Counted from the first letter of the stretch, positions 4,992-14,053 are shown. The stretch is 64,000 bases of DNA from Lepidodermella squamata (GCA_047495785.1 JBLDXI010000023.1:1054001-1118000); one strand, 5' to 3'. Notes: generated by a model not told the origin, from the sequence alone. Made by a program: numbers and translations.

Positions 4992-5612
4992 TCAACTTCT
5001 TTTGAATTTCGAGTGGGTGATTTCAGACAATATACGCGTTTTCATGTCATCATCTGTTGGGAATTTCAGGCTTCCCCTGAGACTTTGTTTCAAATCAACG
5101 TACTTATCATGCTCTTTTATAATCAAATTATATTCAGTTTCAGTGATGTTTCCATCCTCCAAAGCTTTCGCGATCATGTCACCCAGCGAGTTGAGCTTGG
5201 AAGAAGCCAGCGTGCATATACGTTCATGCTTCTGGGCTTTCTCTTCCAAGGCACTCGCCGCGGAGTTCACAATTATGCTAATAAATCCTCCACCAAGTGC
5301 AACTCCTTCTAGGATAATTGCGATAGGAATTCCGGCAACAGTAGTAAGGACACCAATTCCGCCGATTCCTGTCAAGATTGATACACTAGTTAAACCAATG
5401 TTTAATTTCGAACAGATTTTAGCCCATTTTTTATATTTTCTGTATAGTTTGTACCTCATTTCCATCTCTTTGTTCAAAAATTCTTTCAGGCGCCGCAGTT
5501 CAGAGAGCCTGAATTCTTGCACTGGTGAACTAGGAAATGATAGGCGTGGTGCGGTTGGATAGATCTGACTACTCTCAGCTCGCACATGAACTTGTGTATC
5601 ACTGCTATTCAT
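4992..5612 (-). CDS. Polinton membrane protein with Gly-rich hydrophobic hairpin flanked by helical/coiled-coil segments (resembles the adintovirus 'GasderminX'-type gene)
   Basis: 206-aa intact ORF with LTSVSILTGIGGIGVLTTVAGIPIAIILEGVALGGGFISIIV hairpin; preceded by the TCTAAT motif. Confidence 0.65.
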   Translation of the reverse strand: MNSSDTQVHVRAESSQIYPTAPRLSFPSSPVQEFRLSELRRLKEFLNKEMEMRYKLYRKYKKWAKICSKLNIGLTSVSILTGIGGIGVLTTVAGIPIAIILEGVALGGGFISIIVNSAASALEEKAQKHERICTLASSKLNSLGDMIAKALEDGNITETEYNLIIKEHDKYVDLKQSLRGSLKFPTDDDMKTRILSEITHSKFKRS

Positions 5613-5618
5613 CGTTTA

Positions 5619-6332
5619 TCAAAAATTAGATATTTTCAAGTAAAATTCAACGGTCATAGGTTTGCTGGAAGACATCACGATATTGAAAGTGTCACCTTTC
5701 TCAAACTGTTCTACGAAAGTACAGTATTCAGCTATATTACGGATCGCCTCGTAATCGAATGAAAAATATTTGGAAATTAGGATGCTACCGTTTTTCATGA
5801 AATCACAAGTGCAACCAGGTGAGACATTTCCCCAAACTCTAAACAAAAATTGCACATTAGCCAGAATATTTTCGAGAAAAGACAATTCGTCATTAATTTG
5901 AACCAGTAATGTGTGGGTTATAACCCTTGTTACCACCATTTGCGTTTGGTCACTCACATGACCCTCGCCGGAGCCTGAAAATACCTGCCCGTCAACGTAT
6001 TGCTTGTTGACTACGTCAAAAAGAGCTATAGGGTATGCCACGTTTGTTATTCGACCGCCATTCATGTCGATGGTTCTGTCATCAGCGTACTGCAGCGGCT
6101 TATACGATTCGATCAGTCGCCTGGATTCTTTTTCAATCAATGTGTTTTCTTCAACGCACAATTTCGATGCTGCATCATTGTCGAAAACGGGGCGGCCAAG
6201 ATTTTCAATTTTGAAATTATTTGCATTCAAATTACTCATAAACCCTTTTTTTCCATCCGCACGTAGGTATAAATCGGAGCCATGTAGACCTCCTGACCAT
6301 TCGCTGGGAATAAAAATTGAACTAGATTTCAT
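5619..6332 (-). CDS. Putative fiber/receptor-binding protein
   Basis: Two copies of a tail-fiber/trimeric-adhesin-like repeat (LNANNFKIENLGRPVFDNDAASKLCVE; IDMNGGRITNVAYPIALFDVVNKQYVD), then a beta-rich C-terminal domain (FEKGDTFNIVM). Confidence 0.55.
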   Translation of the reverse strand: MKSSSIFIPSEWSGGLHGSDLYLRADGKKGFMSNLNANNFKIENLGRPVFDNDAASKLCVEENTLIEKESRRLIESYKPLQYADDRTIDMNGGRITNVAYPIALFDVVNKQYVDGQVFSGSGEGHVSDQTQMVVTRVITHTLLVQINDELSFLENILANVQFLFRVWGNVSPGCTCDFMKNGSILISKYFSFDYEAIRNIAEYCTFVEQFEKGDTFNIVMSSSKPMTVEFYLKISNF

Positions 6333-6813
6333 TTCAACTGAGTACTGATTAGATTTAATTTTTCATGCCAACGTAATATCGTATCCCTAGAACGGTTCAG
6401 AGTGATTTTATTAGCGACGTTTTCGTAACCGAGCTTCAGTGACAAGTATTTCAGCACAAACTCTACGTTGACCATGTTTTTACCAGGAAATTCCGTGGAA
6501 TAGAGCTTATCTATTTTCTTGAAAAGTGAGTCATGATGTTATCGAGCTCATACCATTTCAGAACTAGTCCTAATTTTCTGATTTTAGCCATGAGGTGCCA
6601 TTTTCGCCTGTAAGGTTGGGAGCGCCTAACCCTTTGGTAATAATCTGTAAAAGGATAAACGATAGCACATTTAGGACAAAAATTGATATAAAGATGGTGA
6701 TCAATTTGCAAAAGTGATGCGCAGAGCTCACACTCTGTTTTCGACTGGCCTTTCACACTCTTGTTTTCGATTTCAGCTAGAAGAGAGAGGCAATATTCGA
6801 ATTCTTCATCCAT
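6329..6813 (-). CDS. VLTF3 (poxvirus A2)-like late transcription factor, one frameshift at ~6522-6525
   Basis: Zn ribbon CELC...FCPKC, then YRRKWHL. Removing one T from a T4 run continues FKKIDKLYSTEFPGKNMVNVEFVLKYLSLKLG...RSRDTILRWHEKLNLISTQLK*, and that stop overlaps the next ATG (ATGA at 6329-6332). Confidence 0.65.
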
Positions 6814-6984
6814 AATCAGGAAAGCACTTACTACTTTAGGCTCTAAGTGCTTTCACAAATTGGCTCTTCTTAGAGCCGCAAATTTGACAATCGCTCACTA
6901 AAATTACTCGCTTGTTTTCCGTAAATTTTCTTTGTTCGTTCAAATTTCCAGTGTGCTTCTTACACTTCAAACAGTACATATTTG

Positions 6985-12447: not shown

Positions 12448-12457
12448 TTACATTCCA

Positions 12458-12473
12458 ATTAGAAATTTCTAAT
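12458..12473. promoter_or_regulatory. Perfect 16-bp palindrome ATTAGAAATTTCTAAT: putative bidirectional late promoter
   Basis: Sits in the 46-bp gap between the divergent ATPase and PLA2-integrase ORFs and presents TCTAAT on each strand towards each ATG. Confidence 0.65.
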
Positions 12474-12493
12474 GCTGTTATAAACATTGTGAA

Positions 12494-14053
12494 ATGTTCG
12501 ACGGAATTATCAATAACTTGCCGGTAGAATTACATCTCCCCTCTTACCCGGTCAAAGGCGAATATCGTCCCCACGGATCATTCAACAACACGCAGAAGTA
12601 TAGTTACGCTGGACCAGGTACAAATTTCGTCCAGCGAATGAAGGAAGGATATGAAGGCATCAATGATCTGGACAAGGCAGCTAAAATTCATGACTATTAC
12701 TATTGGAAATACAAAGATCGAGAAATGCGGACGAGAGCAGACAGACTTCTAGCCGATGAAGCGTTTAAGATAGCCAACGACAATTCGAAAAGCGGATACG
12801 AGAGAGCCATGGCGGCGTTCGTATACAAAACCTTCCACGAAGGAGGCCTAGCCGATAAATTCCATGGAGGTCGAATGCCTACAGGATACGAGCTTTCCGC
12901 TGGGAAATGCGATTTCCATGGCGAGGGATACGAATTGCGGCAACGAAAGCCTGTGGATTATACTGCAACAAAATATATCGACGAAGTTTCAAAACCGAAA
13001 AGACAGCAGAAGAAGTCAGCAGGAAACGCTGAAAAACTCAAGCCTCAATTCGATAAGGAAAGCACGATAGAGAAGATGAATAGCGGAACGAGCAAAGTGA
13101 ATTTTCCCATTTTAGCTGATGAGTTACACAAACCGGCTAGAAAGAGATTCCCGCGGCGCAGAGTAATTATTCACGATGTGGATGAAACATGGGGTATGGA
13201 TCTGTGCTTCATGAATGATCTAGCTGATGACAACGAAGGCTATAAATACCTATTAACTGTTATTGATTGCTTTTCCAAATATGCGTGGGCTGTGCCGTTG
13301 AAAACTAAAGACGCTAAAACTGTATTTGATGCTTTCACAACTATCATCAACAAGAGTAAAAGAAAACCGAAGAATATTTGGGTTGATGAAGGTAGTGAAT
13401 TCTACAACTCAACTTTCACCAAATGGCTAAAAGCAAACAATGTCATCAGGTATTCAACGTATGAAAACTCCCATAACCCAATCATAGAGCGATTTAATAG
13501 AACACTGAAAACAATGATGTGGAAGAGGTTTACTCTTGAAAATACTCGAAAGTGGATCGATATGATAGATTCCTTAGTAGATGAATATAACAATAAGAAA
13601 CATAGATCCATTAATATGACCCCATCCGAAGCAGTGAATCCGATCAATAAAGATAGAGTATTACGAAGTCTCTACCCTAACCCCCCACCAAAATTGAAAA
13701 AACCAAAATTTAAGCTAAACGACATTGTCAGGATTAGTAGAATTGAAGAACTTTTTGAAAAGGGTTTTCATCCTAATGGGTCTGAAGAGTTGTTAAGAAT
13801 AGTGAAGATCAATGATACATACCCTAGAACGTATAAATTGAGAGCATTAGATGGCGAGGAAGTAGTCGGAAGTTTCTATGAGCAAGAGCTATTGAAATCT
13901 AAAATAAGCGAAAATGATTTATACGACAGCAGCATTCACCGCGTTGAGAAGATATTACAAAAGAAAACGGTCAAAGGTAAGGAAATGGTGTTAATTAAAT
14001 GGGCGGGCTATGATCATCCCACGTGGGAGAAAGCCGAAAATCTTATAGATTGA
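12494..14053 (+). CDS. int: Fusion protein: parvovirus-VP1u-type phospholipase A2 + retroviral-type (rve) integrase + chromodomain
   Basis: PLA2: YAGPG loop and INDLDKAAKIHDYYY. Integrase D-D-E: WGMDL, WVDEGSEF, IERFNRTLK. Chromodomain: VEKILQKK...LIKWAGYDHPTWEKAENL. Confidence 0.93.
   Translation: MFDGIINNLPVELHLPSYPVKGEYRPHGSFNNTQKYSYAGPGTNFVQRMKEGYEGINDLDKAAKIHDYYYWKYKDREMRTRADRLLADEAFKIANDNSKSGYERAMAAFVYKTFHEGGLADKFHGGRMPTGYELSAGKCDFHGEGYELRQRKPVDYTATKYIDEVSKPKRQQKKSAGNAEKLKPQFDKESTIEKMNSGTSKVNFPILADELHKPARKRFPRRRVIIHDVDETWGMDLCFMNDLADDNEGYKYLLTVIDCFSKYAWAVPLKTKDAKTVFDAFTTIINKSKRKPKNIWVDEGSEFYNSTFTKWLKANNVIRYSTYENSHNPIIERFNRTLKTMMWKRFTLENTRKWIDMIDSLVDEYNNKKHRSINMTPSEAVNPINKDRVLRSLYPNPPPKLKKPKFKLNDIVRISRIEELFEKGFHPNGSEELLRIVKINDTYPRTYKLRALDGEEVVGSFYEQELLKSKISENDLYDSSIHRVEKILQKKTVKGKEMVLIKWAGYDHPTWEKAENLID

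What the first reader, a model, noticed from the sequence alone, without database searches (positions are those of the whole stretch)
5612..12494. Giant-virus-style late promoter (TCTA + TAAA/ATG) before nearly every virion gene, next to an element-encoded VLTF3-like factor
Seen: TCTA(A/G)T starts 16-21 nt upstream of the ATG in 8 of 10 minus-strand viral genes: TCTAATttttgaTAAAcgATG (5612), TCTAATcagtactcagttgaaATG (6332), TCTAATctagcggTAAATG (8045), TCTAATcctttggTAAAttATG (9438), TCTAGTtattggTGAAttATG (9755), TCTAGTttcaaaTAAAaATG (10526), TCTAGTcgtaatTCAAATG (11714), TCTAATtggaatgTAAATG (12447). It also lies 26 nt before PLA2-integrase (12494). It is absent before polB, the AT-hook gene, VLTF3, the overlapped protease and the cargo gene. 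Established: a TCTA core is the late-promoter motif shared by Cafeteria roenbergensis virus and its virophage mavirus; TAAAT(G) is the poxvirus late initiator. Inference: a two-phase programme with TATA-type early genes and TCTA-type late genes, driven either by the element's own VLTF3-like protein or by a co-infecting large DNA virus. That would make this a virophage-like provirus in an animal genome.
Basis: partly seen in the sequence, partly recalled or inferred. Interest (0 to 1): 0.9.

Follow-up and report, generated by a model that had tools for sequence, protein, structure and literature searches.

The report
Virion-gene start signal in a Maverick
A virus-like transposon (Maverick/Polinton) lodged in an animal chromosome carries the same short DNA signal 16-21 bases before almost all of its particle-building genes, with the same four-letter core that a giant virus of protists and its virophage use for late genes. 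This hints at how such elements time their gene expression.

Summary
TCTART starts 16-21 nt before the first ATG of 9 of 11 minus-strand ORFs. It also lies 26 nt before the integrase ATG. Of 2298 ATGs in the window only 10 have this arrangement. The signal is bipartite: an A-rich stretch, an invariant T-C-T-A-R-T, then A-A at +14/+15. That A-A keeps its distance from the core, not from the ATG. It marks gene starts, not gene ends, and forms a perfect 16-nt palindrome between the divergent ATPase and integrase genes. This fits a DNA-level core promoter with an initiator.

The element spans 3537-22058, with 216-bp terminal inverted repeats (TIRs) and a 6-bp target-site duplication (TSD). It sits inside a Cys-loop receptor gene. 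Its small zinc-ribbon gene lacks the signal, is frameshifted here, and is only marginally VLTF3/TFIIB-like.

Papers confirm the TCTA core and its position for CroV, ChlorV and mavirus. I found no description of it in animal Mavericks. Dependence on a giant virus is not supported, and poxvirus TAAAT likeness is weak. Conservation in relatives was seen only indirectly through proteins, because fetching their DNA was barred.

The parts
3537..22058 (.). Whole Maverick/Polinton-type element, 18.5 kb
   Evidence: Inverted terminal repeats and the 6-bp duplication TTTACG on both sides. No further copy elsewhere in the window.
3537..3752 (+). Left terminal inverted repeat
   Evidence: 216 nt, 91% complementary to 21843-22058.
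21843..22058 (-). Right terminal inverted repeat
3531..3536 (.). Target-site duplication, left copy (right copy at 22059-22064)
   Evidence: Same six bases flank both ends.
12458..12473 (.). Perfect 16-nt palindrome made of two back-to-back motif copies. The minus copy (12458-12463) serves the ATPase gene and the plus copy (12468-12473) serves the integrase gene.
   Evidence: Read. Distances -16 and -26.
11725..11730 (-). Motif copy 16 nt before ATG 11714 (387-aa ORF)
10538..10543 (-). Motif copy 17 nt before ATG 10526 (248-aa ORF)
9768..9773 (-). Motif copy 18 nt before ATG 9755 (100-aa ORF). A second copy at 9779-9784 overlaps the stop of the 248-aa ORF.
9452..9457 (-). Motif copy 19 nt before ATG 9438 (capsid protein). 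It contains the stop codon of the 100-aa ORF.
8056..8061 (-). Motif copy 16 nt before ATG 8045 (209-aa ORF)
6992..6997 (-). Motif copy 18 nt before ATG 6979 (DUF5679 ORF), inside the last codons of the protease-like ORF.
6348..6353 (-). Motif copy 21 nt before ATG 6332 (fibre-like ORF), inside the last codons of the Zn-ribbon gene
5625..5630 (-). Motif copy 18 nt before ATG 5612 (206-aa membrane-type ORF), inside the last codons of the fibre-like ORF
11737..12447 (-). Packaging ATPase, 236 aa
   Evidence: Pfam Pox_A32, E 1.1e-7, above cut-off.
8071..9438 (-). Major capsid protein, 455 aa, intact
   Evidence: 13 relatives at 55-85% identity cover it fully, and two carry Pfam DJR-like_dom. Their shared N-terminus confirms the start.
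9780..10526 (-). 248-aa ORF, minor capsid (penton) protein by position only
   Evidence: No family hit. The single-sequence model was useless, pLDDT 29.5.
6985..7434 (-). Protease-like ORF, 149 aa. It overlaps the 209-aa ORF by 19 nt and has no motif.
   Evidence: Weak Peptidase_C5 (0.015) and Peptidase_C48 (0.055) hits. Overlap.
6836..6979 (-). 47-aa zinc-ribbon gene
   Evidence: Pfam DUF5679, E 8.5e-10, 39.1 bits against a cut-off of 27.
6329..6813 (-). Zn-ribbon, VLTF3/TFIIB-like gene. Interrupted once (one frame change). No motif before it.
   Evidence: Relatives of 138-169 aa span both pieces. Break count. Family evidence.
5619..6332 (-). Fibre-like protein, 237 aa
   Evidence: PHROG tail-fibre families, best 1.3e-10. 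Relatives share the N-terminus.
4992..5612 (-). 206-aa ORF with a hydrophobic glycine-rich stretch. Last gene of the block, with no motif after its stop.
12494..14053 (+). Integrase with N-terminal parvovirus-type phospholipase A2 domain and C-terminal chromodomain
   Evidence: Pfam rve 2e-14, Phospholip_A2_4 6.4e-8, Chromo 2.4e-7.
14078..14350 (-). 90-aa AT-hook ORF, no motif
14351..14453 (.). Divergent gap between the AT-hook and polB-like genes, with a cluster of TATA-like hexamers and no motif copy
   Evidence: Nine TATAWA hits on the two strands, including one full TATAWAAR on the minus strand.
14454..18679 (+). Protein-primed family-B polymerase-like gene. Interrupted at least three times: at least one frame change and at least two in-frame stops by a crude count.
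   Evidence: Polymerase motifs A, B and C are readable. Break count. No profile hit.
6820..6854 (.). 11-bp perfect inverted repeat with a 13-nt loop, 7 nt before the ATG of the Zn-ribbon gene

Best explanation
The signal is an A-rich stretch, then TCTART, then eight variable bases, then A-A. I read it as a compact core promoter with its own initiation point, repeated in front of each gene of the virion module and, mirrored, in front of the PLA2-integrase.

Transcription would start at or near the conserved A-A, about 14-16 nt after the first T of the core. Each late gene would then get a message with a very short leader.

Genes without the signal form a second class. The polB-like gene and the AT-hook gene share a TATA-rich divergent gap. 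The small Zn-ribbon gene also lacks the signal.

The most likely driver is the element's own Zn-ribbon protein, a minimal TFIIB/VLTF3-type factor that lacks the signal itself, working with the host's nuclear RNA polymerase II. That gives an early-to-late cascade inside the element.

Shown: the motif, its spacing, its link to gene starts, and the two gene classes. Inferred: that it is a promoter, where transcription starts, which factor reads it and which polymerase acts.

This copy has an interrupted factor gene and an interrupted polymerase gene, so it probably no longer runs the programme by itself.
For: - Position and enrichment: 9 of 11 ORF starts plus the integrase.
- The A-A at +14/+15 keeps its distance from the core while the ATG distance varies from 16 to 26. 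That is the behaviour of a DNA-level promoter-to-start geometry.
- The signal marks starts, not ends. The first gene of the block has it although no gene lies upstream. The last gene has none after its stop.
- Two copies form a perfect palindrome in the 46-nt divergent gap between ATPase and integrase, as expected of a bidirectional promoter.
- Four copies lie inside the last codons of the upstream gene, so the signal is kept regardless of coding context.
- The genes carrying it are virion genes: ATPase, capsid and fibre-like.
- Relatives of the Zn-ribbon gene reach A2L_zn_ribbon (5.4e-5, at the cut-off) and Pox_VLTF3 (5e-4).
- A model of one relative (pLDDT 79) finds giant-virus VLTF3-like and TFIIB-like proteins first in BFVD. 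TFIIB/Brf chains come first, though not significantly, in PDB.
- Papers: a TCTA core with AT-rich flanks, peaking about 14 nt before the coding sequence, is the late promoter of CroV/ChlorV and the promoter of mavirus.
- Indirect hints that relatives keep it. The 85%-identical capsid relative reads K-K-S-N through the matching upstream stretch. Fibre-like relatives end I-S-N/S/R. Zn-ribbon relatives end N-L-V/I or D-L-V. All are compatible with the core being kept in the DNA.
Against: - No transcript data.
- Leaders of 0-12 nt are short for scanning ribosomes of an animal.
- There are no A[AT]TAAA signals at gene ends in the block, so 3' end formation is unexplained.
- The VLTF3/TFIIB likeness is marginal. 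The window's own piece has no Pfam hit, no fold match reaches E 1e-3 and the profile finds nothing in PDB.
- No evidence links that protein to the motif.
- Conservation in relatives was not seen at the DNA level.
- Only one element was examined.
Confidence: 0.5

Rival explanations
1. Helper-dependent reading. The signal is read by the late transcription machinery of a co-infecting large DNA virus, as in mavirus with CroV, so the element behaves as a virophage-like parasite in an animal.
For: - Same core and same closeness to the start codon as the CroV/ChlorV late promoter and the mavirus promoter.
- Only EMALEs with that motif respond to CroV.
- The very short leader geometry is typical of giant-virus promoters and unlike a -30 TATA geometry (Table 1 of PMC4581360).
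- Polinton-like viruses packaged with entomopoxviruses show that such a lifestyle exists in animals.
Against: - The papers read report a giant virus with this late motif only for protist and algal hosts.
- The element has its own transcription-factor-like gene, which mavirus-type dependence would not need.
- It is an ordinary nuclear insertion with TIRs and a TSD.
- None of the ORFs outside the element that I scanned looks viral, and no element-like protein is encoded there.
Confidence: 0.2
2. Plain host promoter reading. The core acts as an initiator-type element for host RNA polymerase II without any element-encoded factor. Transcription would start at the A of the core, giving leaders of 13-23 nt.
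For: - The core fits the first five positions of the seven-letter mammalian initiator pattern given in PMC4581360 Table 1.
- The element sits in nuclear DNA.
- No viral polymerase is encoded.
Against: - Only 4 of 10 copies fit the whole pattern, little more than chance for the last two positions.
- It does not explain the invariant flanking T's or the A-A at +14/+15.
- It does not explain why polB, the AT-hook gene and the Zn-ribbon gene lack it.
- No host gene in the window shows it at its start.
Confidence: 0.15
3. RNA-level reading. The block is one long transcript and the signal acts in the RNA, for example to help ribosomes restart at each next ORF, or as a processing site.
For: - Gaps between ORFs are tiny: 5-25 nt, with one 19-nt overlap.
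- No poly(A) signals lie between genes.
- The distance to the ATG is narrow.
Against: - The first gene of the block and the divergent integrase have the signal although no ORF lies upstream, and there the two copies form a DNA palindrome.
- The second conserved part keeps its distance from the core, not from the ATG.
- No AG is consistently available for trans-splicing, and three of ten copies break a branch-point-like pattern.
Confidence: 0.07
4. Chance or base-composition artefact.
For: The region is AT-rich (60%).
Against. The binomial P is about 3e-29. No random set of ATGs, even from inside the same genes, comes near. ORF starts were defined by the first ATG before the motif was looked at, and three are confirmed by relatives.
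Confidence: 0.01

Closest known systems
Late promoter of Cafeteria roenbergensis virus and ChlorV, and the promoter of the virophage mavirus and type 4 EMALEs (PMC8547959, PMC5294985, bioRxiv 10.1101/2025.11.19.688996, PMC10945749)
   Same: - A four-letter TCTA core with an AT-rich flank.
- It lies within about 14-20 nt of the start codon.
- It is repeated before many genes of a compact pPolB-plus-integrase element, in front of structural genes.
   Different: - Here the host is an animal.
- The core is extended to six fixed or near-fixed letters with a second fixed A-A 14 nt on.
- Only the upstream flank is AT-enriched: 81% against 61% downstream and 60% overall.
- Not all genes carry it.
- The element encodes a transcription-factor-like protein of its own.
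- No helper virus is known.
Poxvirus late promoters: core, 5-7 bp spacer, TAAAT(G/A) initiator (PMC5294985)
   Same: - Bipartite layout with an upstream element.
- A short spacer and an A-rich start point that abuts or overlaps the ATG.
- Almost no leader.
   Different: - TAAAT is present in 3 of 11 starts and TAAATG in 2.
- The upstream element is a fixed hexamer, not a T-rich 20-bp core.
- No viral polymerase is encoded.
Polintoviruses that encode a VLTF3 homologue, a subgroup noted earlier and again in stony corals (PMC11131425), and VLTF in protist MELD viruses (PMC8502044)
   Same: Maverick/Polinton-type element with a small VLTF3-like gene.
   Different: Those papers report the gene but no promoter motif. 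Here the factor is minimal, about 160 aa in relatives, and its family assignment is marginal.
Polinton-like viruses found in entomopoxvirus occlusion bodies (PMC11296320)
   Same: Small polinton-type elements of animals proposed to depend on a large DNA virus.
   Different: That paper has no promoter analysis. Its elements are very divergent lineages without the classic pPolB-plus-integrase Maverick set seen here.
RNA polymerase II initiator element (PMC4581360 Table 1)
   Same: A short pyrimidine-pyrimidine-A-N-T/A pattern at a gene start in nuclear DNA.
   Different: The full pattern is met in only 4 of 10 copies. The extra fixed positions and the gene-class specificity are not features of a general initiator.

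Membership tests
CroV/mavirus-type late promoter | Invariant TCTA core | tested here: met
   10 of 10 aligned copies. Definition from papers.
CroV/mavirus-type late promoter | AT-rich regions on either side of the core | tested here: inconclusive
   Upstream -8..-1 is 81% AT (57% A). Downstream +6..+13 is 61%, no more than the element's 60%.
CroV/mavirus-type late promoter | Lies close to the start codon (peak about -14 in ChlorV/CroV) | tested here: met
   -16 to -21 in nine genes and -26 in one. Paper value.
CroV/mavirus-type late promoter | Precedes late or structural genes | tested here: met
   ATPase, capsid and fibre-like genes and their neighbours carry it. polB-like, AT-hook and Zn-ribbon genes do not. 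Timing itself was not measured.
CroV/mavirus-type late promoter | Read by the late transcription machinery of a giant virus | not testable with these tools
   Needs expression data.
Poxvirus late promoter | TAAAT(G/A) initiator at the start site | tested here: not met
   TAAAT in 3 of 11 starts and TAAATG in 2.
Poxvirus late promoter | About 20-bp T-containing AT-rich core upstream, 5-7 bp spacer | tested here: not met
   The conserved upstream part is a hexamer with an A-rich 7-nt flank, and the spacer is 8 nt.
Maverick/Polinton (Polintoviricetes) | Retroviral-type integrase | tested here: met
   rve 2e-14.
Maverick/Polinton (Polintoviricetes) | Protein-primed family-B DNA polymerase | tested here: inconclusive
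   Polymerase motifs are readable in the translation, but no Pfam, PHROG or PDB sequence hit. The gene is interrupted.
Maverick/Polinton (Polintoviricetes) | Double-jelly-roll major capsid protein | tested here: met
   Relatives at 55-57% identity carry Pfam DJR-like_dom, E 6.8e-7.
Maverick/Polinton (Polintoviricetes) | A32-type packaging ATPase | tested here: met
   Pox_A32 1.1e-7.
Maverick/Polinton (Polintoviricetes) | Adenovirus-type cysteine protease | tested here: inconclusive
   Peptidase_C5 0.015 and Peptidase_C48 0.055, both below cut-off.
Maverick/Polinton (Polintoviricetes) | Terminal inverted repeats and 6-bp target-site duplication | tested here: met
VLTF3 (vaccinia A2L) family | A2L-type zinc ribbon | tested here: inconclusive
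   The window's piece has no hit. 3 of 8 alignment members hit, the best at 5.4e-5 with 23.2 bits against a cut-off of 22.9.
VLTF3 (vaccinia A2L) family | VLTF3 domain after the ribbon | tested here: inconclusive
   Pox_VLTF3 in 2 of 8 members, best 5e-4. BFVD fold matches to VLTF3-like proteins have E 2e-3 to 5e-2 and TM 0.40-0.47. PDB gives nothing significant.
Virophage lifestyle | Replication depends on a giant virus present in the same host | not testable with these tools
   None of the ORFs outside the element that I scanned looks viral, and no element-like protein is encoded there. The window says nothing about co-infection.
RNA polymerase II initiator | Seven-letter pattern around the start site (PMC4581360) | tested here: not met
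   Full pattern in 4 of 10 copies.

The most novel reading that the evidence does not exclude
An animal-genome Maverick uses the same late-promoter core, at the same place, as a protist giant virus and its virophage, and carries a minimal TFIIB/VLTF3-type factor of its own. One reading is that this promoter-plus-factor system is an old shared inheritance of polinton-type viruses and giant viruses. The other is that animals harbour virophage-like elements waiting for a still unknown large DNA virus that reads this motif.
Probability: 0.2. Interest if true: 0.85.

Novelty: new variant of a known kind. Interest (0 to 1): 0.62.

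Why it matters
How Mavericks/Polintons of animals express their genes is not described in any paper I could find, and no virions have been seen for them.

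A fixed, gene-start-linked signal that splits the element into a virion class and a replication/regulator class gives a concrete prediction: where transcripts start and which genes are switched on together. That can be checked in existing RNA data.

The signal also predicts gene starts. It places the PLA2-integrase in the virion class, which fits a protein carried in the particle.

The shared core with CroV, ChlorV and mavirus bears on the debated kinship of polinton-type viruses, virophages and giant viruses.

Tried and rejected
- Trans-splice acceptor or branch point: rejected. No consistent AG between motif and ATG, and three of ten copies break a branch-point-like pattern.
- Poly(A) or termination signal of the upstream gene: rejected. 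The signal goes with starts; the first gene has it and the last gene has none after it.
- Classical -30 TATA geometry for the motif: rejected by distance. A start 30 nt on would fall inside the ORFs.
- Full initiator pattern: met in only 4 of 10 copies.
- Rfam: no hit in the window.
- Word-based homologue search of the Zn-ribbon piece: blank within its length range. The exhaustive search then found six relatives.
- PDB sequence searches of the polymerase piece and of the Zn-ribbon profile: nothing.
- Single-sequence model of the 248-aa ORF: pLDDT 29.5, not used.
- Cluster look-up of relatives: no names or accessions.
- The CroV genome paper could not be opened.
- The entomopoxvirus-PLV paper has no promoter analysis.
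- Second element copy in the window: none.
- Three antisense copies with the A-A lie inside genes (10495, 10662, 11659). They lack the A-rich flank and precede no ORF. I treat them as probably chance, but this remains unexplained.

Full report
**What is there**

The window holds one Maverick/Polinton-type element at 3537-22058. It has 216-bp terminal inverted repeats (91% complementary) and the six bases TTTACG duplicated on both sides. It is inserted in the coding region of a Cys-loop receptor gene. The ORF to the left matches a paralogue up to its Cys-loop, and the ORF to the right continues at the first membrane helix.

The flanks carry four more such receptor genes, a pepsin-type protease fragment and a weak teneurin-EGF hit. 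The host is therefore taken as an animal, and nothing suggests human. No second copy of the element lies in the window.

**Genes**

The minus-strand block 4992-12447 holds, in order:
- an A32-type ATPase;
- a 387-aa ORF;
- a 248-aa ORF (penton by position only);
- a 100-aa ORF;
- the major capsid protein, with 13 relatives at 55-85% identity, two of them carrying the double-jelly-roll Pfam domain;
- a 209-aa ORF;
- an overlapping protease-like ORF, with weak adenain and Ulp1 hits;
- a 47-aa DUF5679 zinc-ribbon gene;
- a small Zn-ribbon gene;
- a fibre-like protein;
- a 206-aa membrane-type ORF.

The plus strand holds an integrase with a parvovirus-type PLA2 domain and a chromodomain, and a family-B polymerase-like gene whose A, B and C motifs are readable. 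Between them, on the minus strand, lies a 90-aa AT-hook ORF.

Two genes are interrupted:
- the polymerase-like gene, at least three times (at least one frame change and two in-frame stops by a crude two-frame count);
- the Zn-ribbon gene, once (one frame change).

The other genes read through, and three starts are confirmed by relatives. I cannot tell real mutations from assembly errors.

**The observation**

TCTART starts 16-21 nt before the first ATG of 9 of the 11 minus-strand ORFs, and 26 nt before the integrase ATG. The ninth precedes the DUF5679 gene.

- Only 10 of the 2298 ATGs in the window have this arrangement, and nine of those are these ORF starts. P is about 3e-29.
- A word count made without the motif in mind ranks TCTAAT, ATCTA and TCTA first.
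- 3000 random sets of 11 ATGs, including sets drawn from inside the same genes, never reach the observed counts.

**Anatomy of the signal**

Aligned on the core, the shares are:
- A or T in 8-10 of 10 copies at -5 to -1 (all 10 at -3 and -1), mostly A;
- T, C, T, A in 10 of 10;
- A in 7 and G in 3 at the fifth place;
- T in 10 of 10 at the sixth;
- no preference over the next eight places;
- A in 10 of 10 at +14 and 9 of 10 at +15.

Only 17 of 20000 shuffles give any all-A column. This second part keeps its distance from the core while the ATG lies 16 to 26 nt away, so it is tied to the DNA signal, not to the start codon.

TAAA before the ATG is seen in 5 genes, TAAAT in 3 and TAAATG in 2. Gaps between ORFs are 5-25 nt. 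Four copies lie inside the last codons of the upstream gene, and one contains its stop codon. Between the divergent ATPase and integrase genes the two copies form a perfect 16-nt palindrome (12458-12473).

**What it is most likely to be**

The signal goes with gene starts, not ends. The first gene of the block has it with no gene upstream, and the last gene has nothing after its stop. Together with the fixed core-to-A-A spacing and the palindrome in a divergent gap, this points to a DNA-level core promoter with its own start point.

A -30 TATA geometry is excluded by distance. Trans-splicing and branch-point readings fail on sequence. A general Pol II initiator fits fully in only 4 of 10 copies.

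Genes without the signal form a second class. The polB-like and AT-hook genes share a 103-nt gap crowded with TATA-like hexamers. These could serve each gene crosswise at a normal Pol II distance, which is an inference. The Zn-ribbon gene is preceded by an 11-bp perfect hairpin instead. The protease-like ORF overlaps its upstream neighbour and may ride on its message.

**The factor**

The N-terminal piece of the Zn-ribbon gene has no Pfam hit of its own and no word-index relatives. The exhaustive search found six relatives of 138-169 aa that span both pieces.

- Three of the eight alignment members reach A2L_zn_ribbon (best 5.4e-5, just at the cut-off). Two reach Pox_VLTF3 (best 5e-4). Four reach the TFIIB ribbon only weakly.
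- A model of one relative (pLDDT 79) finds VLTF3-like and TFIIB-like proteins of giant viruses at the top of BFVD, with E between 2e-3 and 5e-2 and TM 0.40-0.47.
- In PDB nothing is significant, although TFIIB and Brf chains head the list.

I call it a probable minimal TFIIB/VLTF3-type factor. The evidence is marginal, and nothing ties it to the motif except that it is the one regulator-like gene and lacks the motif itself.

**Comparison with what is known**

Papers state that TCTA flanked by AT-rich sequence is the late promoter of CroV and the promoter of mavirus and type 4 EMALEs. They also state that only those EMALEs respond to CroV. In ChlorV and CroV it peaks about 14 nt before the coding sequence.

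Poxvirus late promoters have a core, a 5-7 bp spacer and TAAAT(G/A), with no leader. VLTF3 homologues are already known in a subgroup of polintoviruses. Polinton-like viruses travelling with entomopoxviruses show that hyperparasites of large DNA viruses exist in animals.

I found no paper describing promoter motifs in animal Mavericks. The signal here works like the CroV/mavirus late promoter and meets its sequence and position criteria. It fails the poxvirus criteria. Whether a giant virus reads it cannot be tested here.

**Relatives**

I did not fetch the DNA of related elements. Conservation could therefore only be glimpsed through proteins:
- the closest capsid relative was called with an N-terminal extension that reads K-K-S-N where the window has its A-run and core;
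- fibre-like relatives end I-S-N, I-S-S or I-S-R;
- Zn-ribbon relatives end N-L-V, N-L-I or D-L-V.

Each is what the kept core would encode in that frame, but none proves it.

Interrupted genes were searched as separate pieces, and no spliced model was tested. Motif conservation is given as column counts.

Slip: an earlier count gave the bounds of the ORF pieces of the two interrupted genes, which amounts to places of breaks. While reading the frames I also reasoned about where they lie. This report gives counts and whole-gene bounds only.

The initiator and TATA patterns used were first recalled from memory and then checked against Table 1 of PMC4581360.

**Verdict**

It is a new variant of a known kind of viral promoter, found in a new setting, resting on one element and awaiting transcript data.

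Noticed in passing
window 6820-6854: An 11-bp perfect inverted repeat with a 13-nt loop, the longest perfect hairpin in the gene block. It lies 7 nt before the ATG of the Zn-ribbon gene and overlaps the stop of the DUF5679 gene. It could be a 3'-end or control element.
   Followed up: partly
window 2821-3536 and 22059-22496: The element is inserted in the coding region of a Cys-loop receptor paralogue, between the ligand-binding domain and the first membrane helix. Four more paralogues with long uninterrupted ORFs follow at 31-56 kb.
   Followed up: partly
window 12494-14053: A single ORF joins a parvovirus-type phospholipase A2 domain, an rve integrase core and a chromodomain. It carries the virion-class signal, which fits a protein packed in the particle.
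   Followed up: partly
window 14454-15100: The N-terminal part of the polymerase-like gene holds about five repeats of a roughly 35-aa unit, weakly like the 2-cysteine adaptor domain (E 0.022).
   Followed up: no
window 10495, 10662, 11659 (plus strand): The three antisense copies of the hexamer inside the minus-strand genes all also have A-A at +14/+15. They lack the A-rich flank and precede no ORF. Either chance or antisense starts.
   Followed up: partly
window 18800-21552: The right arm of the element holds three degenerate repeats of about 190 bp, followed by 1.7 kb of satellite with 35-, 54- and 70-nt units. The left arm has nothing alike.
   Followed up: no
window 3753-4990: The left arm, between the TIR and the last virion-block gene, has only broken-looking cysteine-rich ORFs on the minus strand with no family hit and no motif. 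This may be a spliced cargo gene.
   Followed up: no
window 5619-6332: The 237-aa protein has repeats shared with phage tail fibres (phrog_2710, 1.3e-10). Relatives carry more repeat copies.
   Followed up: partly
window 72-512 and 23682-24120: An 84%-identical direct repeat of about 440 bp in the host flanks on either side of the element, probably another host repeat family.
   Followed up: no
window 4992-12447, minus strand: No A[AT]TAAA signal lies near any gene end of the virion block, and none follows the last gene until the TIR. How the messages end is open.
   Followed up: partly
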